64,000 nt of DNA, taken from positions 97,958 to 161,957 of the forward strand of contig NW_019217902.1 in NCBI RefSeq assembly GCF_002571385.2, in the 5' to 3' direction. A program made the position numbers and the translations under genes. Shown piece after piece: positions 43,001 to 63,895 of the stretch. The stretch is from Stylophora pistillata. Taxonomy: Eukaryota. The notes under the pieces were generated by a model. That model was not told where the DNA came from and did not search any database. It was given only the letters and a program-made list of their open reading frames with translations. Numbering within the stretch: position 1 is the stretch's first letter; each line of letters begins with the position of its first letter.

Positions 43001-46000
43001 AAAAAGAAACAGGAAACATCACATATATTGTGATTCTTACCAATACAACGGATAGACCTGAGGGTGTGGCTACAGAGATTATAAAAAACATTGACAAAGG
43101 TAAGAAGTGAGCAGGTTTGGGGATAATTTTTTTCTTATTAATTAGTTTCCGTGAAAGAAAGATTTCAATGGTTAAGTCAAAGTGTATAAAAGTTTTTCAA
43201 CTATTCATTTGATGTATCTTTACACGTCATATTGTGAAAGCACTTTTGTTAACCCTATTCAAAAGGCGGTGTTATACAGTAAACACCCGCATATAAGAAC
43301 ACATGGATTAAGAACATCAGGCTGAAATTTTGCAAATAAAGCACCATTTTTTTAAGAACAAAATCAGCCTGGAAATATAAAATGTTCTTATAAAGTGGAT
43401 AAGACATTAACATGCCCTTCATGTTAGATGTATTTTCTTGTTCTGTTCACTAGTTAACTAGTAATAAGGCTGATTTTCTTTTGCAGGCTAATCGTTACAA
43501 TAATGTCATGATATTTATTAATTTTCTTTGCCATTAAATATGCTAATTTAATCTCAAGCATTTTTTTTGCATTGTTACAGTTCTGAATTCCAACAACAAA
43601 ATTTAAAAACAATTTAAGAACACCTTAAGGCTGATTTTTCACTAAGCACCCGATAAATAAGAACCTGATCAGCTTGACCTCCAAAATCATGTGTTCTTAT
43701 ATGCGGGTGTTTACTGTATTCGTCTGCGTTTAGTTTATAGAACTGTTAACGATCATAACTGTCTTTGGTAACTACAAGACATTTTTTTCTACGATCCGAG
43801 CTACATATCATGATGGTGGGTACCTGAGACACAATTGAGATCTCACCCCCCTCCCCCCCAAAAAAAATTGCTGTGGGCCAATCCACATTTTAATACGCCG
43901 AATGGAAAGGAATGAAACGACCTTTCTTAAAAACTTCGCACCTGCGATACGCTGAGAATTTTTCAAATGAAACTTTCAACCTCTTACAGGATAAAGATAA
44001 GATTAGATACGATGAATATATGAAGTTCATATATTTTGAAGTGGGGTTATAGATACGTATGATGCACGATCCTCGCTATTGCATAAATAGCGCTCTCTAC
44101 TGCTAGGATCGTGCATCATACGTAAGATAAGATTCAACACAAATATTGTGTTGACTCTTTTTTTTTCTCTTTTTTTTGTTCTCGTCACCATTTTTATTGT
44201 TTCACATCTTTTACACACTGCTCACCAATTTGCGTTTTCCTATGGACCTGCTGACTAGTCTTTTCATTGCAAATTATTATTACTAGAATCCTTGTGGGAT
44301 GTTTTCATTCTTTTTTGTTTCAGATACTCGAGATATTCCCGCAATCGACCTTGCTTTTGCCTTGAGTGCTGCTGCTGTAGACGCCGATGATATCTTCGAC
44401 AAGATGAAGCATGCAGTAGATACTATAATAAAGCTATATGGCATTGAAGAGATTCGGTACGCACTTGTGATATTTGGAGACAAAGCTACCACTGTCACTG
44501 ATTTCGAAAATGACAGCGGGAAAGACGCACTTAGAACGATTGTGCAAAACGTCAGCCGGCCAACGGGTGAACCAGACTTGAAAAAAGCCTTGGAAGAAGT
44601 AGAAAAACTGTTCGAAAACTCTTCGCCCAGGCCTGGAAGCAGAAAAGTGTTGGTGGTTTTTATAGATAAGAAGTCAGCCAATAACCGTGATGACATCAAG
44701 GAGGCAGCTAAACCTCTGATGGAGAAGAATGTCACAATTATACCTGCGACTGTTGGGTCAAAGGTTAATGTCGATGAAATAGAAGTACTGGTTACCAACA
44801 AAGAGTACATCGCCGTCTGTCCAGTTCCTGATCCTGACACTTGGCCAACAATAATTATCGATAAAATTACACAAGGTGGGTCACGGAACAAAAGTTTAAT
44901 CATAGAACTAAACGTTTGTGTTACTTAGTTTCCTGTCTTTCATTGTGCATCACATATTCTTATTTAACCAAAATGACTTTTGTCAGTCCTGTGAGAACTT
45001 TTTGCCCAGTTGTTCGCCTCTTGAGCTGTCGTAAACTAGTTTGCTAGCGATTTGAAACCAGACCCTGATTATGAAAGAAAACAATTTTAACTTTTGTCCT
45101 GGACTATAGAAAGATGTTTGTTTGTCACAAGTTTAACTTGTGTTATCAAAAAGTTTCGTACTTTGGAAAATCGTTATTTTCAATCTATGATCCATATCAT
45201 AAAACTGTTTCGAGATTTCCAATGATACACTGAAATGTGTTACCTTGAGCCATAAATCATAAATTACATCGCAAACGTAGAGACTTTCTGATGAAGCATA
45301 ACCGGTACAACATTTTTAACTGCTTATTGGATAATTGTCTTTTTTGTAGAACTGCCAAAGATTCCTAAGCTCGACCTGGGATTTGCTATCAGCATTGGCT
45401 CCTCGTATGCAGATGCCAACTTGCAAAAGATCAAAGACACCATGAAATCAATAATAGATCGTTACGGAAAAAGTGATATTCGATACAGCTTCATTCTCTT
45501 TGGTGATGAGCCGTCTGAGAGAGTCAGCTTTGGGGAGAGCCAGCGTTTCCCTGTCGCTACTCTCAAGGATAGAGTTGACCGCTTCGCGCGAATCTCTGGT
45601 GCAGCCTTAGACAAAACCCTCGAGGAGGCCAAAGAGATCTTTCAGCGTACGGCGAGACCTGATGCTAAGAAAGTGTTGGTTGTTATCATGGACCAAACAC
45701 AGTCAAGTGGAAAGGAAAGCACAAGAAGGAAGGCAAAAGAGCTACAGGTGTCTGGAGTAAAGGTTGTCCCAGTGGTGCTCGGTGAAGAAGGAAGCAAAGC
45801 GGAAATGGAAGAAATCACCCAACACAAAAATAACCTGGTGGAGATGGAAAAAGATGAGAATGAAGAGAAAGCCGCTGAGAAGATAATGTTCAAAGTACTG
45901 GAAGGTAACTTAAAATGTTCCAAGTTTGCCATTCGCCATCATTTTGACTTGCGTATTTGATTCAACCACATGTCAACTCTGACATTCTGACACTAAGTCC

Positions 46001-49000
46001 CTTTTCCTTCCCTACAAAGAAATTCTTTATCAGCCACACGTGCTATAAGGTAGGCTGATTGAAGGATACAACAATGGCTCGTTTGATTATTAATGTGATC
46101 ACCTTTAATCCATTTTGTGCTTGTTCTTTGTTTGTTCCAGATGTCACCCATGAGGAAGAGATGGTAGACATTGCATTTGCCCTTAGTGCAACAGCATTAA
46201 GCTCGGGCAATAACTTCAGGAAGATGAAATCTCTCGTAGATGAGATCATAAACAGCTAAAGTCCTTTTGCAACTCGTTACAGTGTCATAAAATTTGGGAA
46301 GAACCCAGTGGTTGAACTCGATTTTGGAGACGTGAGTGATCTTGTGGACTTGAGAGAAACCTTGCAGCAAATCACGAGGAATCAGCAGGGAGCTGACCTG
46401 GCCAGGGCTCTTCGAAAAGCTCGGCAGTTGTTCCAGACAGCGGCCACGAGTCGTCCTAATGCTAAAAAGGTCTTGGTGGTGGCCATGGACAAGGTATCAG
46501 ATAGTGATGAGATCGCAGTGAAAGTAGCCGCTAGATCTTTGGCTCGAGAAGGTGTCCGAGTTATCGCTGTCACGTTTGGAAAAGAGGCAGATCCACAAGA
46601 GATTGAAAAGACAACTCTGAACAAGAACAATGTGATCCAAACTGACGATGATGATAGTTCCGAGGATATTGCCGCAGAAGTTGTAGAAAGGGCAAACAAT
46701 GGTAAGAAAAAGGATTGCGTGAACATTTGGTGTTTAGGTAAAAACGAAATGTTTGATTTCAATCAATTCTGCTAGATCCATCAGTTAGTGGAGCACAGGA
46801 ACGCCAACCAACTTTAGAACGGTAACTTTCGCTGTATCTTCACCAACGATTGATTATGAAATAGGATTGTGTCTTGAATTTATTGGATAGATCTATTGCA
46901 CCGATTTGAAATGAAATCAACAGAGGGTAGAGGGGGTTCTAAATAGACCATTGTAAAGGAAAATTTAACCCCCCCCCCATAACGTAACTATACCTCCATT
47001 ACATGGTGCCAAAATCTTTTTGTTTTCTTTATTTTTAACAGATTCTATGCCAATACCAATGGTAGACTTAGGATTTGCCATCAGTGCCACAGACACCGGA
47101 GCCGACCAGACATACGAAAATATGAAAAATGTGGTCAAGCATATTGTTAACTCATATGGGTTAGTTAGCATAAGATATGGAGTCATCCTGTTTGGCGACT
47201 CAGTGACAACATATATTCCTTTCTCGCGAACTTTTCCTGACGAGATGACATTGTTAGCATCCCTGGATTTGCCACAGAGACTCCGTGGAGAGCCTGACTT
47301 GCGGGAGGCCTTAGAGGAAGCAAAGACAATGTTTGACCAAGCGACCCCCCGACCTGGTGCTAGAAAAGTCCTCGCTGTCATCATCGATAACGAGTCTTCC
47401 AATAATAGCAGTGAAATTAAGGAAGCGGCAAAGGTCTTGAAAGATGACGACATTCAAGTCATACCTGTAGGTGTTGGGCCCAATGTCGATGACGAGGAAC
47501 TTGAGATTATAACAGGAAACAAGAAAAACGTCATTAACACAGACAAGGATGCTGATTCGTCAAGCGTGGGTGAAGGAGTCATCATGATGATCCACGAGGG
47601 TGAGAATTCTGCTTAAGTATTGGTTTTACTTGGTCTTACCACAGAGTGTCTTCCATATCCTCTAACCACTCCTTCCGCGATTTTTCCTCTTTTCCCATTC
47701 CTTTGTATCGCCCTCCCAGCCTTTTGGTTCTTTCTTTTTCTCATTATCCTTCTCCTTTTCCAATACCATCTTCTCTTTTTTTGTCCTGCTTCTTCTCTTA
47801 TTTCTCCTTCTTATTTCTTTTCATCCTTGTCTTACTTCCTGTTACTTATACCTTACTTGTCTCCTCTTTGCATTTTTCTTCTCAGGTTCCTCTTTTTCGC
47901 TGCTTCTGTCCGTCGTTGTCCTGCTTCTCCTGTTCGTCTTACATCCTATTCATCTCCTTTCATTATACCCCTTTTTCCTTCTGTTCCTTTTCTTCCTTAA
48001 TTTTCTTTATACGCACCTTCTGTTCTCTTCACCTGCTCCTTTTGCCCTAACTCGACAACGAATGTCTGCTTTATTCCAAGTAGATCTACCCACCATTCCG
48101 GAAACAGACCTCCTATTTGCTCTTAGTGCTAACGCGGTAAAAGACAGAGACAACTTCCAGCAGATGAAAGATATCATCAAGGCCATGATTGATCAGTATG
48201 GGACATCCAGTCTTCGGTATGCTGTTTTAACATTCGGAAACAGACCGATTATAAGAATTTCCTACAATGCAGCTTCCTTGGACGATAAAGCCTTGATGAA
48301 TTTAGTTGATGCGGCTCAAAAACCTTCAGGAGCTTTATTAGATAATGCTCTTGCAGAAGCCAAGAAATTCTTCGAAACGCAAGGCCGCCCTCATGCGAAG
48401 AAGGTGCTTGTGGTGATTTCTGATTTAAAGTCTAGCAGTTCTCTTAGAGACGTTCAGGCACAGGCCAAGTTCTTGGAAGAAGACGACATCAAAGTTATTC
48501 CAGTCGCCCTTGGAAAACAGGCCGACATGAAAGAACTCTCTGCAACCACACCCAACAAAGAGAACCTTGTAGATATCGACGAAGGCGATGATCCTGCTGA
48601 AACTGCCGAGGTTATTTTGCTGAAGATTGTGACAGGTACTCGCACTCTGTGTTTTTGGTAATTACCATCCTTAACACCTTGGGGTTGTAGTCGTAACAAA
48701 CAAATTCTTCGTAAATCGCTACATCACCACTTACCCGTTGCGTCTACACGATATTGGAAATAGGACCGAGTGGCGTCTTATTCTGTTTGTAATTATGCAA
48801 GTGATCAAAGAAATCGCATGATTGCGACACCGATTTTTCAATCACGGATATGACTACAGACACTGGACGACAGACAAATTTGAGAAACGAAATGTTCTAA
48901 CTTATTCAGAAATAAAAGTTAACTGTTGAATTTTATTCACAAGGAAATAAACCAAATAGTCCGTCTATCAGCGCGCACGCATGACGTGAGGGAAAGCGTT

Positions 49001-55000: not shown

Positions 55001-58000
55001 ATGGTATCAAGGTCATTCCACTGATGTTCGGAGGTCAGGCAGATCCAGATGAAACCTCAGCCACCACCACGAACAAGCAGAATGTTGTAAAAGCAAATGA
55101 AACCAGTGATACAAAAGCTATTGCCGAGGAGATAACGCAGAAAGTTACAGACAGTGAGTAAAAGAATAACAATTGTTTTTATTGGTACGACAAAATTGCG
55201 AAAGCTGGGAAGGGACATCAGGCCAGATCCAGTCAGTCTGAAGTCTGAAATCCCTTTTGGGCTTTCGTAAAGTGCATAAAAAAGCGCTTGTATACATTTG
55301 TCGACAATTCTTGACCTTTTCAGGAACTGTCAAAGGACATTTTTACCGGAATTGGCAGTGATGTTTCGATCTGACTGGCCAATTTGCCGTCGTCGATAAG
55401 AGTTCAGGCAACGCGACAAAATTTAATGTGGACTCACTCGGCTACGACTCAACATTTTGACCACCGTGAGGACAAAGGTCTTGACGTTGTCAAGAGTACA
55501 GAACACGCTTAACCACTGTTAATTTTTTAAATGTCGAGACTTTGACTTAAAGCAAAAACTATTCAAGTTTAAATATACGTCAAGTTTACACTAGAGTAAG
55601 GTCAGGTTGACTCTTACAGCTGAGCTTTGTATTTAGTTCAATACAAATAATGGCAGTACCATGTATTTTGATTTGTTTTTCACGAGGACTTAACTCTTCA
55701 TATCTGAAAGTACCTAATGTTTCCGCTGCTTTTCTCTAGGTGAGCCAGATATTCCACTTGTTGATATGGGATTTGCTATCAGTGCAACAGCAACTAATTC
55801 CAGAGAACATTTCCAGAAATTGCAAGAAGTCATCAAAACCTTCGTTGAGAAGTACGGTTCTCAGAGGATCGCTTACAGTGTTCTGACATTTGGATCGACC
55901 CCAACCATTCGTGTCAGCTTTAATGATGCAGCAAGGGGAGACAAGGTCTTGATGAGCACCATAGACAACATACCACAAAACGTAGCAAGGGCGTCTCTTG
56001 ATAAAGCCCTGCACGGAGCGAAAGAGCTTTTCAAGGATTCCAATGGTGCCCGAAAGAATGCTATGAAAGTCTTAGTGGTCATCACAGACGAGAAGTCAGA
56101 TAGTCTGGAACAGGAAGTGAAGAAAGCAGCACAAAGACTCGACGAAAACGGCATCCGCGTTATTGGCATTGCACTTGGAGATGGAAGCGATGGAGAGCTG
56201 GAGAGGATTACTGATGTTGAGGGTGACGTGCTCAACACAACCGATTCGACCTCACCCGAGAAAATTGTGGAGAAACTAGTAGAGCGAGTCTTAAACAGTA
56301 AGTTCCTTAGTAATTGTTTTTGTTTTGTTTGTTGCACTGGTGAAGTGTAAAAAACCGAAATTTATGGAAACTGCAAATATCCAAAGTAGAGGCGCAATTC
56401 GTTCCTGCACACTTGCACACTAATGCCCAGGTTGTACGTAGCCCATGGGAATTTTCCTTTTCCTCTTTTTTGTTTGTTTAATAATAATAATGATAATAAT
56501 AATAATAATAACAACTTTATTTAAGGAGGGTAACAGATAACAGTAATTCAACTGATGAACTAGTGGCCCTCGATAGACAACTGAAACAATAATTCAGATT
56601 GAACATAACATTATTAAGAATCCTGACTGGCCGGAGGCAAACCAGTTGGCTATTTTAGAAGCAGGGCCGAGGATTTGAACACGGAGCTACCGTGGAACAA
56701 ATCCGAAAGTGGTCAGAGCGGGACTCGAACCCGGGAGCGCCGGATTGCGAGTCCGACACGCTGACCACTCGGCCGCGTTGCCTCCATCATTGTTTATGAA
56801 ATTGGAATTGGAAACAAAACTGGTCTCCCACTGTGAGTCACTTTGGCCTTTTAACGTTTTTCCCCTATTGTATTTTTTGTGGAATAAATCATGTAAGAAG
56901 ACAATTAAAAATAACGAAATACCAAGCTTTTCGATCACGTGCAAGCCTAGTACGTGCGAGATTAGAAGCGTTTGTCGCCCCCTCACCCCCAGACCTTGTG
57001 CAGCCATTTTTTTTTATGCTTGTAGAATAACTAACTAAAGATAGCAATCCATGCGTCATAAATTTAACTAGAGGAAACTGTTGTTTTTGGAAAGAATACC
57101 TGGGGTACATGAAGTTGGTAATGGTACACAAAAGTAAGATGGCAAATACAGTACACACGATACCACCATGTTTTTATCCAATCGTAACTTAACAGTCAAA
57201 TTGTTTGTTTATCGCAGAAACTGCTACGCTTGATGAAATAGACTTGGCATTTGCTATCAGTTCTGCTGCAGCGGGTTCAGACTCAACTTTCCAGCAAATG
57301 AAAGATACTGTACAAGAGATAATGCAGACTTACCAAACCGACAAACTGCGGTATGCTGTGACAGTGTTCGGAGATCGGGTCATTTCTCCTATCAACTTTG
57401 CACTGACTCTTCCAGATGACAAAACGGTACAGTGATTTACGCCATCATTTCAGTACATAATTGTATTGCAAGAATAATAGCTACTCACTGACTAAGTGGG
57501 ATGGGAGGACGGAAAAAAAGTTTTAGCCACAATCAGATCGAGTGCAGCGAGATTCGTGCGTCATTATGGAGAGGCAAATGATTCCTCGTCCAACCTGACC
57601 TAACTCAGTCGACTTTTTTTTTGTTATATGACTTCGCGGTGTCTTTTTCTTTCCTTCATTTTTTGCCTCGCTGCTCACGACGTCGTAAAGCTAATGCCAT
57701 CCTCTATTAACACATTTATTTTTACAACGATAACAGTATTTTCGGAGTCGTTCGGAGGTGAATAGCAGAGGATATTCGGAGTTTGAGTGACCTATCAGAG
57801 CGCTCCTTCAGTGCTATCCACTCTTTTAGTTTATACTTGTAAGACTTACTGCACGTCTCAACGTTTGGACTGCTGGTCTTCATGAGAATACATTGTCGAC
57901 TAGTTAGACATCACCGTATGAAGGTTGATGCTGTTCTGTAATTGGGTGGTTTTCAGTAGCTTTGATTGGAGTATTTGTCCAAATTAACCAGTCACAAAGA

Positions 58001-61000
58001 CAGGACCTGTCCAACTTCTCCACGAATAATAACCACAGACACATGCTTCATAATTTTGTGTTAAAACTTGACGTTTTTTTTCTATCTGTGAAGTTATTGG
58101 TTCTTCTTTCGCACAATCAAGTCCTCTTGCGTACACTTAAAGGAATAGATGAAATCTTCTTGAGTGCAAACTGAAATTAGCTGAATCACTTCGATGTTTT
58201 TACAAGTAGTTTTTTTCAGATTTGAATTACCAAACATTTCCCTGACTTCTCTCGATTTCATGACGAAAATTGACTTTTGAATAACACGACATGAGTATTT
58301 CTTGTATTCTCTCTCAGATAAAAACGTATTTTGACTCCATCTCACGTCCTTCTGGCGAACCCGACCTCGAGCGAGCTTTATCAGAAGCCAGGAAATTATT
58401 CGACCAGGCTTCGCCCCGCCCGAATGCCAAGAAGGTGTTAGTGGTCATCATGGACAAGAAATCTTCTAATAATTATGAGAAGATTGAAGTCGCCCTCAAG
58501 CCTCTTAAGGAAGATGACATCAAAGTTGTGCCGGTTGCCGTCGGTACTGATGCCAGTTTAAATGAACTGAAGAACATTACGTCCGCTGAGGGATATGTGG
58601 TGACAGCAGAGAAGACCACAGATCCTGTGAAGCTTGCAGAGAAGATCATGACCAAAGTGACCATGGGTAAATGATTATTAATCACGTGCAATGTGAATGG
58701 CATGGAATCCAAGATATGACGTACTCTACCACTTCCTATCTCTTCACTTTAGGAAAAATATCTTCAAATTCACCTTTTTTCTTGAATAGGAAAAACCTCG
58801 AATTTGTAAAAGTTCTCCTGGCTAGCTAGTTTTACTTTTATAACAATTATAACACACTTCTTTGCATCATTTGGGATAAAGTTACAAACCACAGTTAATT
58901 TTGCTGCGTGAACAAGGAGCCGATTCTTCCTAACTACTGTTAAAACGTGGCCTTCTCTCCCAAGCCTCACGTGGCCTTCTCTCCCAAGCCTCACGTGGCC
59001 TTCTCTCCCAAGCCTCAACATAATCGAGGCTGATGTGGATGGAAGACTAAGAAACGTGCAACCTGATGTGTAGGGGGAAGGGAGTTGGTGGGTGAGTAGG
59101 ACGAGATCGCGAATGACCTTGCTGAGGCTTCTGGGCCCATCTTGCTTCATCTCACAAAGTGGATGCGTTAACAGCAGAAAAGTGTGAACCATCAATGCAC
59201 TACGTCTATCCGTTTACAAAACTAACAAAAGATGTTTCTTTTTTTTTTCTTAGAAATATTGGACGTACCTGAGACTGACATTATTTTTGCAATCAGCGCC
59301 ACTGCACAGGTGGATTACATAGAAAACTTCCGTCAGATGAAAGAGATCATCATTGCCATGATTGACAAGTACGGCAGAGGAGACCTTAAGTACTCGGTCA
59401 TAGTCTACGGAGATATACCGCGGCCCGAACTTCGCTTAAGCAACATCTTTGACTCGGACGAAAACTTAATGAGTTTTATCCGTTTAATTCGTAATAGTCG
59501 TGGAGCATCACTTTCTAAAGCCCTAACACTCTCGAACCAGGTAGAGTAGAGAAGACATTATATTTTTATGTGACTTGTTTGCCTTTTAGTCAAACAATGA
59601 AAGTTAGTACACTACAATCAAACTAGAAAGAGCAATTTTTGGTTGAGTTTCGTAAGTAGTTTGCCATTGTCTGGGTTTGCGACTGGCCTAGGAAACTTGC
59701 GTTACCCTAACATTTTGTCGGACACAATTTACAGCCGTTCTGAGTTTGCGCAGGAGATTCTGTTGAATTACGTGTCGCAAAGCATCACGGGGCTGTTTTG
59801 GTACTGCAATTATATCCTTTCTCATTGGCTCGCTGTATTTCAATCTTGGTTTTGATTTGTTGGGGTGATTAGTTTTGGTTTGGTCTTAAAAAATTTACAA
59901 AGAATCTATCTGTTGAGGGTAACGTCAGATTATGTAAATTCCGTGAAAACGGTCAGAAATGTCACTGAACCACCCTAAGATTGGAAGTTTTCGATCTTTG
60001 AAGGGTGAGTATGGGACTTTGAAAGGGACCTAGAAAATATAAGATTAAATTATTTGGAGCCCAGATCGGTTTTTTTGTATTTTGGTTTCTTCTATCGAGT
60101 CTTTCGCGATGAATCATTGTAGCTGAAAGTCTGTCACACAGTAACTTATTTTGTTCCTCTCTGAAGGAGTTCGTTTCATTGGGACGTTCAAACGCCAGAA
60201 AGATTTTGGTTGTAATCACAGACAAGAGATCCACGAGTGATATCAGTGACGTCAGTAAAGAAGCCAGAATCCTGGAGCAGGAAGACGTCAGAGTTATACC
60301 AGTGGCACTTGGAAACGAGGCCAACGAAAACGAGTTGCAGAAGATCACGCCGTGGTTGGATGATTTAATAGAGACTGATAAGGATAGCAATCCATACAAG
60401 GTGGCAAAGGTGATTCTGAAGATTGGGTTGAAAGGTTGGTGGAATGTCATTTTTACATTCGGTGATTTGCATCCGGAGTAACGGTCTGACGTGCAGGTTC
60501 TCATAAATTGTAGCAAATAACGTAATTTTACCATCGATTTATACCACAAATGACATTTCTGGTGAGAAAAAAACTGTTATTAGACGGTGAACTTGATAGT
60601 AATGCGTCAGAGCTATCACCTGCATCCGTTGCAACGACCAGGCGCAACAAAAATCGATCGCATCTGTTTATCTTTTTGTTAATCAACGTTCGTAAGACAT
60701 TTGTTTCTTGTTGAGCAATGTTAAATGTACAGACGTCAGGTTGTGGAGTGTTAACCCCTCGACCCCTAAGAGTGACCAGCATCTAAATTCTCCTTACAGT
60801 ATCACCCCTGAGTCACACATTATATTTTCCTTGTCAACGCGTTAGGAAATGTTTAGAGAACAGTATGGAGAATATGCTTACTGATGTTAGGTGGAGAAGG
60901 GTTAAATTAACATTTAATGATCTCCCCAATTCATAAGAAGTCCAATGTTTGTGGAATGTTTGTAGAAAACTCATTTTATTTCACATTTTGTAGTTATCAA

Positions 61001-63895
61001 TCAACTTTCGTGCTTCGTTTCGAGCTCTTACTGTTTTCTTTTATCTGCAGACAAGCCAAAACTTCCAGAATTGGATCTAGCCTTCGCTATTAGCGCTACA
61101 GCTCTAAAAGCCGGTGACAACCTCAAGAAAACGAACGAAATAATCAAGGATATTGTCAGCAAGTATGGAATCAATAAAATGCACTACAGTCTGGGTACAT
61201 TTGGAAGCACACTGAACGTCATTATCAAGTTCAGCCGACACGTAAACAGCAATGCTCAGTTCATGGGCCTGGTGGACACTGTCCGCGAAGTTCCAGGAAG
61301 CTCTGACTTGGCTAAAGCTCTGGAAGAGTCCCCAGCCATGTTCACAGAGGAGAATGGAGGGCGACCGAATGCCAAAAAGATTTTAGTCGTGATTATTGAT
61401 AACAAGTCAGACAGTTCTAGTGATGACACTGAAGATGCCGCGGCTGTGGCGAGGGAAGCTGGCATCCGAGTGATCCCAGTTGGGCTTGATAGAGCGGACA
61501 AAGGGGAGCTGGAGAAGACGACAGCTGTAGAGGAGGATGTGCTAACACCATCAGACAGCGACTCGGCTCAAAACATTGCGAAGGATATTATAAGAAGGGC
61601 ACTGAATGGTAAGAAAACCGTGTGATCTCTGTTGACGGAGTGCCACGTGTAAGGTTGTAGTGGGAATCCAGTTACTTAGAGTCCAAGTTCATTGTTATAT
61701 TTTTCTTATCTTTCAGAGACAGCATCGGTTCCTCTTTTAGATTTGGGCTTTGCAATCAGCGCTTCAGCCCAGGATGCAGAAAAAACGTTTACTCTGATGA
61801 AAGAAGCCATAGACTCCATCGCTACACGTTACGAGGCCAGCAAAATACGCTATGCTCTACTCACCTTCGGCAGCACAGTCAATAAAGAGGTGAGTTTCAC
61901 TAAAGATTCGCCCAACCCAGAAGAACTACGAAAGGCTTTAGAAGGGGCCAGTAACCTGAGTGGTGCACCAGACTTGAAGAAGGCTCTCGAGGAGGCAAAG
62001 ATGATGTTTAAACAGGCTACCCCTCGACCCGGAGCTAAGAAGGTTCTCATAGTAATAATGGATAAAAAGTCAGCCAGTGATTCCGGTGATGTCAAGAAGG
62101 CAGCTAAGCTGTTAGAAGATGTGAATGTCAAAGTGGTCCCTGTTGCAGTGGGTTCCGAAGTCAGTCTATCTGAACTTGAAAAAACAACAACTAATAAGAA
62201 ATTCATCGTCATTGCTGGAAAAGATGAAGATCCAGAGAGACTTGGAGAAGAAATAATCAGAAAAGCTATAAAGAGTGAGTGTTTTGTTGGCCTAAACGCG
62301 TGTTACTTGGCTAAGGCTTCTATGTTGTATGCGTCTTCTCTTGCTAATATTTAGAATTACTGACTGATGTTTCCTAGCTGTAGTAGCTGTTGGGATTGTT
62401 TATGCGCTTGAGTCTTTGTTGCGACCTGTTGACAACCCCAGGATGAATTCTATTGTACGTAAAACTTAAACTAATCTTTAAAAGTGTTGTCACTATCTAC
62501 GTATAAAGTGGAACACATTGAAAGTATCTTTCCGGGTGAATATTAAAACGGAAGCCATCTTTGATTTCTAACAGATCTTCCAGCGGTCCCGATGGTTAAC
62601 CTGATCTTCGCGATCAGCGGTCTCTCCTCTAATGCAAACGAGAAGTTCCAAAAGATGAAAGACCTCATCAAAACGATGGTGGATGAATATGGCAAGGAAA
62701 GGATTCACTACAGTCTAATTGTGTTTGGAAACGAACCTTCAGTTGAGCTGAGATTCTCCAGGACCTTCGATAGTGATGCTGAACTTAAAGCACATCTTGA
62801 TCTTAAGGCTAGAGCCACGGACGGAGCTGCTTTGGATAAGGCCCTGAAGAAAGCTGCTGAGTTGTTTGGGGAATATGACCGGGAGGGCGCTAAGAACGTA
62901 CTGGTGGTGATAAAGGACAAGAGGTCTACCAGTAACAGGAAGGACGTGCAGAGCATGGCTATTCCATTGTGGGAGGGCGACGTCGAGGTGATTCCAATTG
63001 CGTTTGGTAGTCAGGCTGATAAGGGGGAGCTGGAGTTGATTACGCTTCACAAGGAAAACTTGATATTAGCATATATAACGAACAAGACGGTGAACGTTGC
63101 TCAGAGAATCATGGACAAAATGATGAAAGGTAAAGTAACGACATCAAAGCGGTTGATTTGTCATCTTAGGAAAATGCAATAATGTTACTGTTAATGAAAA
63201 TCACGTTAGTAGCTGCTGATGAGTTTAATCAGCTTTGATACATCAGGGTTGCTGCCAGAAGAGGCGTTTTCTTTGGAGTCAAACCTCTCGCGGCTTTGTC
63301 CCTCAACTCAAAGGTTTTTGTTTTAATTCAAAGCGCTAAAAATCCGCCAGCTAAGTAGAGTAAACTCAGGGCCACACCCCTCACTGCAAATCAGCCGTTA
63401 AAATCCGCAACTTCGTCTTCCAACAGCTAGACACATTTTTCCCTTTTTTACTGCACACATTGATTGACGCTATTATTTGGTGTTTTCTTAGCTATTCCGA
63501 TGGTAGACTTGGCCTTTGCCATCAGTTCCAATGCCGCTGGAAAAGAGGAAACGTTTCAGAAAATCAAAGACGCCATTGACTTTATCATCACCTACTACGG
63601 CAACGATCGCATTCGTTATGCAGTCGTCACATTCGGTTTATCCTCCTACGAGGACGTCGAGTTCCAAGATGGTCGGACTATGGATGAACTCAAACAATTA
63701 ATCGAGCGTCTTCCTCGTGCTATTGGTGTACCAAATCTGAAAGAGGCGCTGGAGACAGCAAAAGGAGTGTTTGATCAGGCATTAGACAGACCAAGGGCCA
63801 AAAAGTTCTTGGTGGTGGTCATGGACTCCAATTCAGGTAACCAGCCAGGAGAGATCCAACAAGCTTCAGAAGCTATAGAAGAGGATGAAATCAAG
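462..63895 (+). CDS. Giant tandem-VWA protein gene, partial: 60 exons, 49 VWA domains + 1 follistatin/Kazal domain. Domains resemble collagen VI/matrilin VWAs; no collagen triple helix, start or terminal stop in the window
   Basis: Successive + strand ORFs repeat the VWA pattern DLxFAIS...YG...I(R/H)Y(S/G)xIxFG...L(D/E)xAL...RPxAxKVLVVxxD...IxVIPVxxG. Each is bounded by polypyrimidine-AG and GT sites with compatible phases at all 59 junctions. Confidence 0.9.
1066..1546. mobile_element. Degenerate MITE with imperfect TIRs
   Basis: tgccgttaactgtcgcgtataagcc versus reverse complement of the end (taccatagactgccccttacaagcc); internal (t)aagccc sub-repeats. Confidence 0.4.
1617..1829 (+). CDS. 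Exon 2: follistatin (FOLN+Kazal) domain
   Basis: ctgtag|ATCC...GGAG|gtgaga, phase 1-1; DPCENKVCQHYAQCVSYADGRTQCACDEKCAKIEDPVCGTDGQDYANECVLKATACRQSKAVAVADKRPCG has 10 Cys and the PVCGTDG-x-x-Y-x-NEC Kazal motif; not in the ORF track. Confidence 0.92.
2384..2793 (+). CDS. Exon 3: VWA domain 2, N part (intact MIDAS DSSRS..T..D)
   Basis: tttag|CCTGT, AAG|gtctgc (phase 1-0); ACVHAMDIGVVLDSSRSVG...GRTRTDKA...VITDG. Confidence 0.9.
2867..3146. mobile_element. Dispersed ~280-bp non-autonomous element; related copies near 17875-18118, 22059-22337, 28756-29025, 59628-59890
   Basis: Shared motifs (agagc..tttcaa, tgtgattgg, ccaatcaga, ttcccgcgc, ctcattggctc) recur in both orientations. Confidence 0.55.
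3523..3877 (+). mobile_element. ~355-bp TIR element, copy 1
   Basis: cagagctgaat...attcagctctg inverted ends; near-identical to 13482-13835. Confidence 0.8.
3893..4104 (+). mobile_element. TTAA-flanked ~210-bp MITE (piggyBac-type ends)
   Basis: ttaactcttt...aaagagttag; same family as 13061-13271 and 60751-60905. Confidence 0.75.
4142..4301 (+). CDS. Exon 4: VWA domain 2, C part
   Basis: tgtag|ACCAAA, CAAG|gtatgg (phase 0-1); TKGVQVMAVGVG...ENLCQ. Confidence 0.88.
5275..5817 (+). CDS. Exon 5: VWA domain 3
   Basis: ttag|GCATT, AAAG|gtgagc, phase 1-1. Confidence 0.88.
6340..6897 (+). CDS. Exon 6: VWA domain 4
   Basis: tcag|AAATG, AAAG|gtaatg, phase 1-1. Confidence 0.88.
7043..7690. repeat. 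Compound microsatellite: (TCTG/TCTA)n, then inverted (GACA/GATA)n with a higher-order unit
   Basis: tctgtctg tract 7043-7175; gcagatagataagcagacagacagacag units 7235-7580. Confidence 0.9.
7883..8202 (+). CDS. Exon 7: VWA domain 5, N part
   Basis: caaag|AAATC, AAG|gtagaa, phase 1-0; ends ARK. Confidence 0.85.
8769..9000 (+). CDS. Exon 8: VWA domain 5, C part
   Basis: tcag|GTCCTG, ACAG|gtaaca, phase 0-1; starts VLVVITD. Confidence 0.87.
9607..10158 (+). CDS. Exon 9: VWA domain 6
   Basis: ttag|TTCAA, CGAG|gtagaa, phase 1-1. Confidence 0.87.
10395..10525. repeat. Polypyrimidine low-complexity tract
   Basis: Almost pure C/T run. Confidence 0.7.
10934..11182 (+). CDS. Exon 10: VWA domain 7, N part
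   Basis: acag|ATGGG, ACAG|gtgaca, phase 1-1. Confidence 0.85.
11577..11885 (+). CDS. Exon 11: VWA domain 7, C part
   Basis: tcag|GGCCT, AAAG|gtatgc, phase 1-1; GPDLQKAL... Confidence 0.85.
12360..12560 (-). mobile_element. SINE fragment (same family as 32170-32450)
   Basis: Reverse complement matches gtgcctctctccac...aattgtcagggaagcctgatgaaatgctgggg...gagtacagactt. Confidence 0.7.
12689..13011 (+). CDS. Exon 12: VWA domain 8, N part
   Basis: ttcag|TACGC, AAG|gtaaca, phase 1-0; ends NAMK. Confidence 0.87.
13061..13271 (+). mobile_element. TTAA-flanked ~210-bp MITE
   Basis: ttaacccttt...cagtatggagaatatgcat...gaggattaa. Confidence 0.75.
13482..13835 (+). mobile_element. ~355-bp TIR element, copy 2
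   Basis: cagagctgaataa...ttattcagctctg; colinear with 3523-3877. Confidence 0.8.
14060..14291 (+). CDS. Exon 13: VWA domain 8, C part
   Basis: ttag|GTTGTG, GAGC|gtgagg, phase 0-1. Confidence 0.85.
14497..14745 (+). CDS. Exon 14: VWA domain 9, N part
   Basis: ttag|CTGTG, AAAG|gtaata, phase 1-1. Confidence 0.85.
15264..15440 (+). mobile_element. Degenerate tRNA-derived SINE (family of 56480-56785)
   Basis: B-box cccgggttcgagttcc followed by aactggttgtcccctgccagttgggatt. Confidence 0.6.
15612..15929 (+). CDS. Exon 15: VWA domain 9, C part
   Basis: gcag|GCGTT, ACAG|gttagt, phase 1-1. Confidence 0.85.
16606..17163 (+). CDS. Exon 16: VWA domain 10
   Basis: atag|ATCCC, AGAT|gtaagt, phase 1-1. 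Confidence 0.87.
18161..18709 (+). CDS. Exon 17: VWA domain 11
   Basis: gcag|GCAAG, CTTG|gtatga, phase 1-1. Confidence 0.87.
19607..20167 (+). CDS. Exon 18: VWA domain 12
   Basis: ttag|AATCA, CCAG|gtttgg, phase 1-1. Confidence 0.86.
20477..21031 (+). CDS. Exon 19: VWA domain 13
   Basis: ttag|GTTTG, AAAG|gtattt, phase 1-1. Confidence 0.87.
21396..21917 (+). CDS. Exon 20: VWA domain 14 (short, C-terminal in-frame deletion)
   Basis: ttag|AACGT, GATG|gtaagt, phase 1-1; 522 nt. Confidence 0.86.
22368..22925 (+). CDS. Exon 21: VWA domain 15
   Basis: ccag|TTGTG, ACAA|gtaagt, phase 1-1. Confidence 0.88.
23120..23630. repeat. (CCGT/CCCT)n microsatellite flanked by (TCTG)n-rich units
   Basis: ccgtccgtccgtccctccgtccgt... 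over ~500 bp. Confidence 0.95.
23837..24388 (+). CDS. Exon 22: VWA domain 16
   Basis: ttag|ATCGT, ATAA|gtaagt, phase 1-1. Confidence 0.86.
24467..24678. mobile_element. Palindromic MITE
   Basis: gcatgcagtagcgaaaatggcagatttgacgaattttcgtca pairs with tgacgaaatttcgttaaatctgccgttttcgttactgcgtgc. Confidence 0.75.
24833..25161 (+). CDS. Exon 23: VWA domain 17, N part
   Basis: ttag|ATGGA, AAG|gtaaaa, phase 1-0; ends NAAK. Confidence 0.86.
25506..25734 (+). CDS. Exon 24: VWA domain 17, C part
   Basis: gtag|GTGTTA, AAGG|gtaagt, phase 0-1. Confidence 0.87.
26115..26330. mobile_element. Hairpin MITE with ~80-bp TIRs
   Basis: cttttacagttgtgggcttggtggccaagcctttgaacaggagtgaggctaagggtgacc pairs with ggtcacccttagcctcactcctgttcaaaggtttggccaccaagcctacaactgtaaaa; TA at both ends. 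Confidence 0.85.
26359..26570. mobile_element. TTAA-type MITE, related subfamily
   Basis: ttaacccattcaatccca...tgggaattaaaaggttta imperfect TIRs, ~210 bp. Confidence 0.55.
26722..27273 (+). CDS. Exon 25: VWA domain 18
   Basis: acag|GTAAA, AGAG|gtgggt, phase 1-1. Confidence 0.86.
28165..28731 (+). CDS. Exon 26: VWA domain 19
   Basis: aaag|TTTCA, ACAG|gtatgt, phase 1-1. Confidence 0.86.
29550..30101 (+). CDS. Exon 27: VWA domain 20
   Basis: branch-point-like gactaac upstream, tcag|AACCA, ACAG|gtataa, phase 1-1. Confidence 0.87.
30790..31344 (+). CDS. Exon 28: VWA domain 21
   Basis: tcag|ACCCA, CAAA|gtaagt, phase 1-1. Confidence 0.88.
31494..32145. other. Assembly gap (652 N) inside an intron
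   Basis: Run of N. Confidence 1.
32170..32450 (+). mobile_element. SINE-like element with degenerate tRNA-like head; short 5' relic also at ~18780-18850
   Basis: cattgtgttgtgttcttgggcaaaacattttactc...aattgtcagggaagcctgatgaaaatgctggggg...gagtacagacttt. Confidence 0.65.
32521..33072 (+). CDS. Exon 29: VWA domain 22
   Basis: ttag|TTATC, GAGG|gtaagt, phase 1-1. Confidence 0.88.
33400..33948 (+). CDS. Exon 30: VWA domain 23
   Basis: ccag|AAAAA, AGAA|gtaagt, phase 1-1. Confidence 0.88.
34860..35420 (+). CDS. Exon 31: VWA domain 24
   Basis: ttag|AGAGA, CAAC|gtacgt, phase 1-1. Confidence 0.86.
36128..36691 (+). pseudogene. Exon 32: VWA domain 25 with in-frame TAG at 36397-36399 (pseudo-exon, null allele or base error)
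   Basis: acag|TTCCA, GAAA|gtaagt intact; reads ...GGTPDLD*TLEYAKNA..., where sibling domains have PDLDKAL; frame continues normally. Confidence 0.8.
37073..37636 (+). CDS. Exon 33: VWA domain 26
   Basis: acag|ATCTG, AAAG|gtaagt, phase 1-1. Confidence 0.88.
38359..38910 (+). CDS. Exon 34: VWA domain 27 (divergent)
   Basis: tcag|AGGAG, GAAG|gtatct, phase 1-1. Confidence 0.84.
39211..39774 (+). CDS. Exon 35: VWA domain 28
   Basis: ttag|GTCTG, GGCG|gtaagt, phase 1-1. Confidence 0.88.
40123..40338. mobile_element. Degenerate MITE
   Basis: gggccagttgttcgaa...ttgaacaacccgacc imperfect inverted ends. Confidence 0.45.
40513..41061 (+). CDS. Exon 36: VWA domain 29
   Basis: acag|TTGCG, AAAG|gtaaaa, phase 1-1. 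Confidence 0.87.
41280..41635 (+). CDS. Exon 37: VWA domain 30, N part
   Basis: atag|AACCA, CAG|gtacat, phase 1-0. Confidence 0.84.
42069..42255 (+). CDS. Exon 38: VWA domain 30, C part
   Basis: ttag|GCTAGA, AAAA|gtacgt, phase 0-1; ARARRLVDQGVTVIPV... Confidence 0.82.
42551..43099 (+). CDS. Exon 39: VWA domain 31
   Basis: acag|GACCT, AAAG|gtaaga, phase 1-1. Confidence 0.88.
43277..43716. mobile_element. Tc1/mariner-superfamily (pogo/Tigger-like) MITE, 440 bp
   Basis: Perfect 29-bp TIR cagtaaacacccgcatataagaacacatg with TA target-site duplication on both sides. Confidence 0.92.
44324..44875 (+). CDS. Exon 40: VWA domain 32
   Basis: tcag|ATACT, CAAG|gtgggt, phase 1-1. Confidence 0.88.
45350..45904 (+). 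CDS. Exon 41: VWA domain 33
   Basis: gtag|AACTG, GAAG|gtaact, phase 1-1. Confidence 0.88.
46141..46701 (+). pseudogene. Exon 42: VWA domain 34 with in-frame TAA at 46257-46259 (pseudo-exon, null allele or base error)
   Basis: ccag|ATGTC, AATG|gtaaga intact; reads ...DEIINS*SPFATRYSVIKFG..., with the stop at the conserved Tyr; frame continues. Confidence 0.8.
47042..47599 (+). CDS. Exon 43: VWA domain 35
   Basis: acag|ATTCT, GAGG|gtgaga, phase 1-1. Confidence 0.88.
47640..48050. repeat. CT-rich low-complexity intron tract
   Basis: ~400 bp strongly pyrimidine-biased. Confidence 0.8.
48081..48635 (+). CDS. Exon 44: VWA domain 36
   Basis: caag|TAG|AT tandem acceptor (48081 or 48084), ACAG|gtactc, phase 1-1. 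Confidence 0.85.
49264..49488 (+). CDS. Exon 45: VWA domain 37, N part
   Basis: ttag|ATGTT, ATCA|gtatgt, phase 1-1. Confidence 0.85.
49930..50265 (+). CDS. Exon 46: VWA domain 37, C part
   Basis: gcag|AATCC, AAAG|gtaagt, phase 1-1. Confidence 0.85.
50922..51479 (+). CDS. Exon 47: VWA domain 38
   Basis: atag|ATTAT, GAAG|gtgggt, phase 1-1. Confidence 0.87.
51812..52366 (+). CDS. Exon 48: VWA domain 39
   Basis: tcag|CCATC, GAAG|gtcagt, phase 1-1. Confidence 0.88.
52503..53063 (+). CDS. Exon 49: VWA domain 40
   Basis: gcag|ATTTC, AACG|gttagt, phase 1-1. Confidence 0.88.
53358..53918 (+). CDS. Exon 50: VWA domain 41
   Basis: ttag|ATGAA, AAAG|gtattt, phase 1-1. Confidence 0.88.
54605..55153 (+). 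CDS. Exon 51: VWA domain 42
   Basis: gaag|ATTTG (weaker acceptor), GACA|gtgagt, phase 1-1. Confidence 0.84.
55740..56297 (+). CDS. Exon 52: VWA domain 43
   Basis: ctag|GTGAG, AACA|gtaagt, phase 1-1. Confidence 0.88.
56480..56785 (-). mobile_element. Full-length tRNA-derived SINE with (ATT)n tail
   Basis: Minus strand: ggaggcaacgcggccgagtggtcagcg (A-box-like)...cccgggttcgagtccc (B-box), ~200-bp body, then (att)n tail seen as (aat)n at 56480-56510. Confidence 0.8.
57218..57426 (+). CDS. Exon 53: VWA domain 44, N part
   Basis: gcag|AAACT, ACG|gtacag, phase 1-0. Confidence 0.82.
58318..58666 (+). CDS. Exon 54: VWA domain 44, C part
   Basis: tcag|ATAAAA, ATGG|gtaaat, phase 0-1. Confidence 0.85.
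58945..59016. repeat. Perfect 24-bp tandem repeat x3
   Basis: acgtggccttctctcccaagcctc three times with no spacers. Confidence 0.95.
59254..59540 (+). CDS. Exon 55: VWA domain 45, N part
   Basis: ttag|AAATA, CAG|gtagag, phase 1-0. Confidence 0.86.
60167..60434 (+). CDS. Exon 56: VWA domain 45, C part
   Basis: gaag|GAGTTC, AAAG|gttggt, phase 0-1. Confidence 0.83.
60751..60905 (+). mobile_element. TTAA-flanked MITE, internally deleted copy
   Basis: ttaacccct...gaacagtatggagaatatgc...aagggttaa. Confidence 0.75.
61051..61608 (+). CDS. Exon 57: VWA domain 46
   Basis: gcag|ACAAG, AATG|gtaaga, phase 1-1. Confidence 0.88.
61717..62274 (+). CDS. Exon 58: VWA domain 47
   Basis: tcag|AGACA, AAGA|gtgagt, phase 1-1. 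Confidence 0.88.
62575..63129 (+). CDS. Exon 59: VWA domain 48
   Basis: acag|ATCTT, AAAG|gtaaag, phase 1-1. Confidence 0.88.
63492..63895 (+). CDS. Exon 60: VWA domain 49, N part (continues beyond window)
   Basis: ttag|CTATT, AAG|gtgggt, phase 1-0. Confidence 0.84.

What the first reader, a model, noticed from the sequence alone, without database searches (positions are those of the whole stretch)
44324..63895. Period-3 super-repeat of VWA subtypes (A-B-B), titin-like higher-order organisation
Seen: three characters co-vary with period 3. Type A (VWA32, 35, 38, 41, 44, 47, and 49 where visible) has G-x-P-[DN]-L before the central helix, mostly T-[FY] before MK/MR/IK, and x-V-G in the late strand (e.g. 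IPVAVG). Type B (33-34, 36-37, 39-40, 42-43, 45-46, 48) has GA[AS]L-like sequence without Pro, mostly [NH]-[FL], and L/F before the G (IPVALG/IPVAFG; VGLD in 46). The order is ABB x5, then AB, A. Inference: the array grew by repeated three-domain block duplication and kept register, as titin Ig/Fn3 super-repeats do. That suggests a periodic filament or ruler, and is some evidence that domain order matters, against free exon shuffling.
Basis: partly seen in the sequence, partly recalled or inferred. Interest (0 to 1): 0.76.

Follow-up and report, generated by a model that had tools for sequence, protein, structure and literature searches.

The report
Three-domain VWA super-repeat in coral
A giant coral matrix-protein gene strings together about 60 VWA adhesion domains, and in its last third two subtypes alternate in a strict A-B-B rhythm that other corals keep unchanged, so the order is old and maintained, though what it does is unknown.

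Summary
Three alignment columns split domains 32-53 perfectly into A (32, 35, 38, 41, 44, 47, 49, 52) and B (the rest). The order is ABB x5, AB, ABB, AB, and it continues beyond the window.

Identity at lags 3, 6, 9... is 38.2% against 33.8% at other lags (0 of 5000 order shuffles reach this). The signal survives removal of the motif columns. It is absent from domains 1-31.

RNA contigs from three studies splice exons 32-37 in order, through symmetric exons of 552-561 nt.

In contigs of other corals (60-78% protein identity, introns unalignable), all 19 loci with orthologue chains (of 29 fetched) keep the exact domain order, including the AB|A irregularity. The three class columns never switch class (0 of 161 cells).

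The two B positions (B1, B2) differ weakly but significantly (51 of 10000 shuffles). Duplication of a three-exon block is therefore well supported and pre-dates these coral lineages.

Literature searches found no VWA super-repeat. Other notes of this scan cover the same gene, not other DNA.

The parts
44324..44875 (+). d32, type A (exon)
   Evidence: HMM 2-185 at 44332-44877; I/P/V at cols 22/83/143; exon ends from RNA joints, 552 nt
45350..45904 (+). d33, type B1 (exon)
   Evidence: HMM 1-185; N/A/L; RNA joints GT..AG, 555 nt
46141..46701 (+). d34, type B2 (exon; the assembly has TAA at 46257-46259)
   Evidence: Two HMM pieces in one frame; N/A/F; 561-nt exon in RNA contigs, which read C for A at 46259
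47042..47599 (+). d35, type A (exon)
   Evidence: HMM 2-185; T/P/V; 558 nt by RNA joints
48084..48635 (+). d36, type B1 (exon)
   Evidence: HMM 2-185; N/A/L, one-residue shorter loop; 552 nt by RNA joints
49264..50267 (+). d37, type B2 (two exons, 49264-49488 and 49930 to about 50267)
   Evidence: HMM 1-74 and the rest; intron 49489-49929 shown by RNA joint; relative L010 is split at the same HMM position
50930..51481 (+). d38, type A
   Evidence: HMM 2-185; T/P/V
51820..52368 (+). d39, type B1
   Evidence: HMM 2-185; H/A/F
52508..53065 (+). d40, type B2
   Evidence: HMM 2-185; N/A/L
53366..53920 (+). d41, type A
   Evidence: HMM 2-185; T/P/V; orthologue series at 98-60% identity
54613..55149 (+). 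d42, type B1
   Evidence: HMM 2-183; N/S/F
55748..56296 (+). d43, type B2
   Evidence: HMM 2-184; H/A/L
57229..58668 (+). d44, type A (two exons, 57229-57426 and 58312-58668)
   Evidence: HMM 3-68 and 67-185; T/P/V; same split in relatives L012 and L036
59262..60436 (+). d45, type B1 (two exons, 59262-59540 and 60179-60436)
   Evidence: HMM 2-94 and 100-185; N/A/L; same split in L012 and L036
61059..61610 (+). d46, type B2
   Evidence: HMM 2-185; N/S/L, strand reads VGL-D
61725..62273 (+). d47, type A
   Evidence: HMM 2-184; T/P/V
62583..63131 (+). d48, type B1 (no B2 follows it)
   Evidence: HMM 2-185; K/A/F; d47-d48-d49 adjacency kept in L016, L023 and L026
63491..63898 (+). d49, type A, first exon (second exon lies 317-463 nt past the window end)
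   Evidence: HMM 2-138, rest at 64317-64463 in window numbering; T/P/I

Best explanation
This is the C-terminal third of a VWA array of about 62 domains in a very large, expressed extracellular-matrix gene of a stony coral. Each domain is normally one symmetric, phase-1 exon.

From d32 to at least d54 the array is a true higher-order repeat of three positions, A-B1-B2. It was made by repeated tandem duplication of a three-exon block (at least seven copies), and one B2 was lost or never made after d48.

A keeps the state that most upstream domains have: Thr at col 22, Pro at col 83, Val/Ile at col 143. B is a derived subtype: Asn/His/Lys, Ala/Ser, Leu/Phe. Column 83 aligns with the Thr of the G-x-T loop of MIDAS-bearing VWA domains, so the two subtypes differ on the face that VWA domains normally use to bind ligands. 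That face has lost its metal site here.

The expansion happened before the coral lineages sampled here diverged. Since then no domain has been gained, lost or moved, and the class-defining residues have been held by class-specific purifying selection.

Shown:
- the pattern, its statistics and its continuation outside the window;
- expression and splicing of d32-d37;
- collinearity and class conservation in relatives.

Inferred:
- block duplication as the origin;
- B as the derived state;
- the two subtypes offering different binding or packing surfaces every third domain along a beads-on-a-string arm like the N-terminal arm of collagen VI alpha3.
For: Domains and classes:
- Segmentation and numbering.
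- Three perfectly discriminating columns, 10 of 185 columns at p<0.01.
- BLOSUM clustering recovers the classes unsupervised.

Periodicity:
- Lag-3k identity 38.2 vs 33.8%, 0 of 5000 shuffles; without motif columns 36.8 vs 33.4%, 0 of 5000; no period 3 in d1-17, d8-24 or d15-31.
- Of periods 2-7, only 3 and 6 stand out, and only in windows covering d29-47.
- Downstream of the window d50 and d51 are B, d52 is A, d53 is B.

Transitional or ancestral state:
- The A state is the majority in d3-31: T 17 of 29, P 15 of 29, V/I 23 of 29.

Expression:
- RNA contigs of 6.9, 12.7 and 24.2 kb from three studies join exons d32-d37 in order through GT..AG introns; exons are 552, 555, 561, 558 and 552 nt.

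Relatives:
- 19 of 29 metagenome loci carry orthologue chains, and all 19 are strictly consecutive. Examples: L010 d31-41, L012 d40-48, L016/L023/L026 d47-48-49, L029/L031 d50-57.
- Only exons align to the window at DNA level (66-80%), so the divergence is deep.
- Class columns: 0 switches in 161 orthologue cells. Their orthologue identity is 0.93-0.96 against a column mean of 0.69 (ranks 13-24 of 185).

B1 versus B2:
- 51 of 10000 shuffles on averaged matrices, 130 of 10000 using relatives only.
- AU tests: A clade p=0.48, B clade p=0.56, B1+B2 clades p=0.30; scrambled sets rejected at p=0.006 and p=0.036.

MIDAS face:
- Column 83 aligns with Thr of GQT in both PTMP1 domains.
- The first MIDAS position is Asp in only 4 of 62 domains, and DxSxS is present in 1 of 62.
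Against: - The similarity excess is small (about 4 points), and deep nodes of the trees are unresolved.
- In one search, A needs 2 changes and B1 and B2 need 3 each. d52 falls away from the other A domains, d51 pairs with d57, and d37 groups with d53.
- Identity-based clustering does not recover the classes cleanly, and not at all without the motif columns.
- B1 versus B2 is weaker without the motif columns (369 of 10000) and was 238 of 10000 on window rows alone.
- Distance matrices of A, B1 and B2 across triplets are not correlated (Mantel 12305 of 40320, 166 of 720, 357 of 720), so no shared duplication history is visible.
- d49-57 alone show no significant period 3 (568 of 3000). d55-57 carry mixed states.
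- The AU searches were stopped after about 40 iterations, and only one scrambled control of each kind was run.
- No structural or binding evidence exists for different surfaces.
Confidence: 0.72

Rival explanations
1. Titin-like ruler. The A-B1-B2 triplet is a structural unit with conserved inter-domain interfaces. The eight or so triplets form a rod with a fixed three-domain period that measures or spaces a partner.
For: - Strict conservation of number, order and even the one irregularity across deeply diverged corals.
- Class-specific selection on three residues.
- Exon lengths of 552-561 nt leave only short linkers between domains.
- All three positions evolve at the same rate: 0.698, 0.681 and 0.691 identity to orthologues.
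Against:
- The class residues sit near the degenerate MIDAS face, not at the termini where neighbouring domains meet (inferred from the PTMP1 alignment).
- The same conservation of order holds in d5-14 and d20-29, which have no super-repeat. Order conservation is therefore not specific to the periodic part.
- The period is broken once (d47-48-49) and fades after d54.
Confidence: 0.15
2. The classes come from convergence or gene conversion, not common descent. Every third domain was independently pushed to the A or B state, or B copies homogenised each other.
For: - Deep tree nodes are weak.
- Much of the signal sits in a few columns.
- Clustering without the motif columns fails.
Against: - Period 3 remains at 0 of 5000 shuffles after removing all 32 motif columns.
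- Within-class identity is only 36-39%, so there has been no recent conversion.
- Each domain has its own orthologue with SH-aLRT 95-100.
- Scrambled groupings are rejected by the AU test while the true ones are not.
Confidence: 0.08
3. Chance pattern, or an artefact of reading motifs by eye.
For: The classes were defined after looking at the data.
Against: - Unsupervised BLOSUM clustering gives the same classes.
- 0 of 5000 order shuffles reach the observed excess.
- P=0.000125 for the spacing of A.
Confidence: 0.01

Closest known systems
Titin A-band super-repeats (7- and 11-domain Ig/Fn3 patterns; recalled from general knowledge, no paper read for it here)
   Same: A fixed order of domain subtypes is repeated in tandem. 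Domains at the same position of different repeats are more alike than neighbours. The pattern is conserved between species.
   Different: The domain family differs (VWA, not Ig/Fn3). The protein is extracellular, not sarcomeric. The period is 3. Same-position similarity is far lower (about 38%). No partner filament whose period it could match is known.
Collagen VI alpha3 N-terminal VWA array (N10-N1)
   Same: Both are tandem VWA domains without a conserved MIDAS motif, arranged as beads on a string (PMC3919171, passages read). Collagen VI alpha3 is one of only two solved-structure sequence matches (9han, E=6e-11). One VWA per symmetric exon is shown here by RNA; for collagen VI this is recalled, not checked.
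   Different: The coral array has about 62 domains rather than 10. No Gly-X-Y run of 6 or more triplets occurs in 154 kb of + strand. No subtype super-repeat is described for collagen VI in the passages read. The coral exons leave a shorter tail after the last helix than the 19-residue extension of N5.
Mussel proximal thread matrix protein 1 (PTMP1, PDB 4cn8)
   Same: It is the best solved-structure match by sequence (E=2.1e-19, both of its VWA domains align). Both are invertebrate extracellular tandem VWA proteins.
   Different: PTMP1 has two domains with D-x-S-x-S and G-x-T intact in the alignment shown. The coral domains have Ser in place of the first Asp (46 of 62) and Pro or Ala/Ser in place of the Thr.
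Agrin and coral agrin-like proteins
   Same: The array is flanked on the same strand by Kazal/follistatin-type exons (30 cysteine patterns), two GON domains and a laminin-G exon. Agrin-like proteins with Foln/Kazal series are reported in the Corallium rubrum skeleton (PMC7853314, passages read).
   Different: No agrin described in the passages read carries a VWA array. No NtA domain was detected. Whether the flanks and the array are one transcript was not tested.

Membership tests
VWA domain (Pfam PF00092) | Match to PF00092 above its gathering score | tested here: met
   6 of 6 exons tested score 64.9-78.0 bits against a cut-off of 23.8
MIDAS-bearing VWA / integrin I-type domain | D-x-S-x-S metal site in the beta1-alpha1 loop | tested here: not met
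   Complete motif in 1 of 62 domains (d2). The first position is Asp in 4 and Ser in 46
Super-repeat of domain subtypes (titin kind) | A fixed order of subtypes repeated in tandem at least three times | tested here: met
   ABB x5, AB, ABB, then A52-B53 and, after a masked stretch, B54. Spacing P=0.000125
Super-repeat of domain subtypes (titin kind) | Same-position domains more alike than neighbours, for every position | tested here: met
   Within A 0.386 vs A-B 0.320-0.334. Lag-3k excess reached by 0 of 5000 shuffles. B1 vs B2 is weaker: 51 of 10000
Super-repeat of domain subtypes (titin kind) | Pattern conserved between species | tested here: met
   19 of 19 orthologue chains are collinear; 0 of 161 class switches
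Super-repeat of domain subtypes (titin kind) | Period matches a structural period of the molecule or a partner | not testable with these tools
Collagen VI alpha3-type chain | Collagenous Gly-X-Y domain in the same gene | tested here: not met
   No run of 6 or more Gly-X-Y triplets on the + strand of the 154 kb examined. Three masked stretches were not read
Collagen VI alpha3-type chain | One VWA domain per symmetric exon, MIDAS mostly absent | tested here: met
   Exons of 552, 555, 561, 558 and 552 nt joined in RNA; MIDAS count
Agrin | Kazal/follistatin series plus C-terminal laminin-G | tested here: inconclusive
   Kazal_1/2 and Laminin_G_1 hits in flanking exons, but linkage to the VWA array in one mRNA is not shown
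Agrin | N-terminal NtA domain | tested here: not met
   The signal-peptide-like first ORF (L006:7732-8190) has no Pfam family at E<=0.01

The most novel reading that the evidence does not exclude
The A-B1-B2 triplet is a folded three-domain module with conserved interfaces. Its eight or so tandem copies make a periodic rod in the coral matrix that presents an ancestral-type binding face every third domain. This would be an extracellular ruler or multivalent scaffold built from VWA domains, with no counterpart outside the Ig/Fn3 muscle giants.
Probability: 0.15. Interest if true: 0.8.

Novelty: new variant of a known kind. Interest (0 to 1): 0.5.

Why it matters
Higher-order repeats of domain subtypes are the signature of molecular rulers such as titin and nebulin. 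They are not described for VWA arrays in the papers I could search.

Here the pattern is statistically solid, expressed, and frozen across deeply diverged corals. This happens although every exon is symmetric and could be added, dropped or skipped without breaking the frame.

That gives a clean natural case for asking whether domain order in giant matrix proteins is functional. It also singles out three residues on the old metal-binding face as the place to test what distinguishes the two subtypes.

Finally, it flags a very large coral matrix gene for which no source in the protein collections gives a name.

Tried and rejected
Congruence of duplication histories. Mantel tests between the A, B1 and B2 distance matrices were not significant, so the order of block duplications is not recoverable.

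Trees.
- The careful treekit tree did not finish, so the quick tree was used.
- The treekit clade test did not finish.
- Four 91-row IQ-TREE searches timed out.
- Fast-mode searches were so poorly optimised (a double constraint scored better than a single one) that I discarded them.
- The AU tests reported come from a 54-row set: d32-54, their orthologues, and d6, d10, d18 and d26 with theirs. The searches were stopped at about 40 iterations.
- Rows d14, d27 and d30 were dropped from the tree for very long branches. d0-2 and d58-61 were not included.

Clustering. Identity-based average linkage did not reproduce the classes.

Other periods. Periods 2, 4, 5 and 7 showed nothing after allowing for 60 tests.

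C-terminal architecture. The EGF, F5/8-C and membrane part of the best long relative, P0048, has no match on this contig, so P0048 is not a model for this gene's end.

Relatives.
- The word search found only single-exon ORF "proteins" without names.
- The whole-library search found no full-length giant model.
- A single-protein scan of metagenome contigs found none.
- Ten of the 29 loci held only paralogue-level matches (<55%) and were not counted as chains.

Supplementary files of PMC7853314 (coral agrin-like sequences) could not be seen and might bear on whether parts of this gene are already in a skeletal proteome.
Full report
WHAT THE WINDOW IS

The window is G000:C119:97958-161957 of a 397.6-Mb eukaryotic assembly. 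Public RNA runs that hold the stretch are labelled with one organism or "coral metagenome". Another agent's note in this scan names Stylophora pistillata; I did not verify that.

The + strand carries ORFs of about 200 residues every 1-1.4 kb. All six that I tested are VWA domains (PF00092, 64.9-78 bits).

A profile HMM built from the array finds 62 domains on the contig:
- one upstream of the window (d0);
- d50-d61 downstream.

Three masked N stretches interrupt this region, and I left them alone. The canonical metal site is gone: the first MIDAS position is Asp in 4 of 62 domains and Ser in 46.

THE OBSERVATION

Over d32-d53, alignment columns 22, 83 and 143 split 8 A domains (32, 35, 38, 41, 44, 47, 49, 52) from 14 B domains without exception. 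Each column passes a family-wise permutation threshold. Ten of 185 columns have p<0.01 where 1.85 are expected.

The order is ABB x5, AB, ABB, AB.

The predicted i,i+3 diagonal exists:
- 37.4, 37.0, 38.0 and 36.4% identity at lags 3, 6, 9 and 12, against 32.7-35.2% at other lags.
- Pooled, 38.2 vs 33.8%. None of 5000 shuffles of domain order reaches this. The same holds after removing the 32 columns around the three motifs (36.8 vs 33.4%).
- Domains 1-31 show no period 3.
- Among periods 2-7, only 3 and 6 stand out, and only in windows covering d29-47.
- Placing 8 A at random among 23 positions gives six or more gaps of exactly three with P=0.000125.

Clustering on BLOSUM scores recovers the classes without using the motifs. 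Clustering on raw identity misplaces d33, d36 and d42. Without the motif columns it fails.

TREES

The domains are only 30-44% identical, so deep nodes are weak.
- Quick ML tree of the 62 domains: 7 of 8 A form one group (SH-aLRT 90) with d38 next to it, and the B domains lie elsewhere.
- With 39 orthologues added: every window domain that has an orthologue in the set pairs with it (SH-aLRT 95-100). Only d32, 35, 44, 47 and 49 form a supported A group (90). d38 and d41 are nearby, and d52 is elsewhere.

AU tests used a 54-row set, with searches stopped early:
- A as one clade is not rejected (delta lnL 2.1, p=0.48).
- B as one clade is not rejected (delta lnL 0.08, p=0.56).
- B1 and B2 each as a clade is not rejected (delta lnL 9.6, p=0.30).
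- A scrambled mixed set is rejected (delta lnL 54.3, p=0.006).
- A scrambled B1'/B2' split is rejected (delta lnL 27.2, p=0.036).

IS IT A THREE-POSITION REPEAT, OR ONLY A VERSUS B?

- On window rows alone, B1 and B2 differ weakly (238 of 10000 shuffles).
- With each domain averaged over its orthologues and d54 added, within-minus-between identity is 0.0136. This is reached by 51 of 10000 shuffles.
- Using relatives only: 130 of 10000. Without motif columns: 369 of 10000.
- Mantel tests for a shared history of A, B1 and B2 across triplets are not significant.

I read this as a real but faint third level. It fits a B-to-B1/B2 split shortly before a rapid amplification of the triplet.

THE GENE IS REAL AND THE EXONS ARE USED IN ORDER

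RNA contigs from three studies (6.9, 12.7 and 24.2 kb) join d32, 33, 34, 35, 36 and both halves of d37 through GT..AG introns. The piece before d32 is the end of d31.

The exons are 552, 555, 561, 558 and 552 nt, all multiples of three. Any of them could therefore be duplicated, lost or skipped in frame.

The TAA inside d34 in the assembly reads TAC in all three RNA contig sets.

OTHER SPECIES

The word search with the d41 exon found a graded series of single-exon ORFs at 98-60% identity, none named. The whole-library search found 1499 relatives but no full-length giant model.

Assigning the representatives to window domains shows one-to-one orthologues for 28 domains: best 53-88% against second-best at most 46%. 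The class characters are kept.

A scan of metagenome contigs with an alignment of d41 orthologues returned 29 loci.

Nineteen of these carry orthologue chains, and all nineteen are strictly consecutive in the window's order:
- L010: d31-41.
- L012: d40-48.
- L016, L023 and L026: d47-48-49, so the AB|A irregularity is old.
- L029 and L031: d50-57, with the d53 and d54 orthologues adjacent.
- L014: d5-14.
- L034: d20-29.

Further points on these relatives:
- The intron positions inside split domains are shared.
- Only exons align to the window at DNA level (66-80%), so these are distant corals. L010 and L012 are about 90% identical to each other.
- At the three class columns, 0 of 161 orthologue cells switch class. 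Changes within a class (V/I, A/S, N/H) do occur.
- These columns are 0.93-0.96 identical between orthologues against a column mean of 0.69.
- A, B1 and B2 evolve at the same rate (0.698, 0.681 and 0.691).

WHAT IT MOST LIKELY IS

The region is an old A-B1-B2 super-repeat made by tandem duplication of a three-exon block, then frozen.

The A state is the majority state of d3-31, so B looks derived. Column 83 aligns with the Thr of G-Q-T in both VWA domains of PTMP1. In metal-binding VWA domains this position supplies the MIDAS threonine (established knowledge). So the subtypes differ on the classical ligand face.

I infer that A and B present different binding or packing surfaces with a three-domain period.

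The ruler reading is not excluded but has no direct support. Order is equally conserved in the non-periodic parts of the array.

CONTEXT

On the same strand the array is preceded by:
- a signal-peptide-like ORF with no Pfam hit;
- Kazal, GON, Kazal, VWA d0, Kazal x2.

It is followed by:
- Kazal exons, VWA d60, GON, VWA d61;
- about 23 more Kazal exons and a laminin-G exon.

There is no Gly-X-Y run in the 154 kb examined. The nearest solved structures by sequence are PTMP1 (2.1e-19) and collagen VI alpha3 (6.1e-11). Collagen VI VWA domains also mostly lack MIDAS and form beads on a string (PMC3919171, passages read).

NOVELTY

Five full-text searches returned no paper on a VWA super-repeat or on this coral gene. 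From them I read passages of two papers (PMC7853314, PMC3919171). For the rest I saw only listings.

Limits of this work:
- Supplements were closed.
- Joined spliced models were neither searched nor folded.

Noticed in passing
window 46257-46259: The in-frame TAA inside VWA34 of the assembly reads TAC (A>C at 46259) in RNA contigs of all three RNA contig runs laid. The exon is spliced normally. The stop is therefore an allele or an assembly error, not a feature of the transcripts sampled.
   Followed up: yes
window 36396-36403 (VWA25): The d25 domain is broken by a stop between two HMM pieces in the window. In the relative L034 its orthologue is one open piece (6902-7441, HMM 4-183). No RNA was laid here.
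   Followed up: partly
L006:7732-8190, L005, L004, L007, L008 (window numbering -12268 to 123944): The VWA array is embedded in an agrin-like set of exons on the same strand: a signal-peptide-like ORF, 30 Kazal-like cysteine patterns, two GON domains (E=3e-53 and 1e-58) and a laminin-G exon. One Kazal pattern lies inside the window at about 1691, between d1 and d2.
   Followed up: partly
window 44250-50249 (RNA run X5): One polyA RNA contig is 24,208 nt long and runs about 19.4 kb past d32 on the upstream side. By length alone that would cover all upstream VWA exons and more. I could not lay it further.
   Followed up: no
L020-L024, L027, L028, L032: These metagenome contigs carry three VWA domains at 33-41% identity to the window's. 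In L021, L022 and L024 the three domains are back to back with no intron (e.g. L021 358-909, 913-1467, 1474-2019). This is a different gene, or cDNA-like or foreign DNA.
   Followed up: no
G000 contigs C58 (474435-501525), C102, C669, C244, C78: Further clusters of VWA exons lie elsewhere in the genome. Two (C58:476906, C102:281682) are as close to d41 (38-40%) as its own A-type neighbours.
   Followed up: no
window d5, d8, d17; downstream d56, d58: Several split domains share an intron at HMM position about 108. In d5, d8 and d56 it is also present in relatives. It may be an ancestral intra-domain intron kept in a few copies.
   Followed up: no
P0048 (1916 aa, from the whole-library search): The best long relative has 7 MIDAS-less VWA domains, then EGF, an F5/8 type C domain, a membrane span and a Gly/Ala/Ser-rich tail. 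It is a membrane-anchored cousin of the array from an unnamed source.
   Followed up: partly
window d29, d30 and downstream d56, d57: Domains flanking the ABB run carry a mixed state (Asn at col 22 but Pro and Ile at cols 83 and 143). d31 is closest overall to B2. These may be half-differentiated triplets at both edges.
   Followed up: partly
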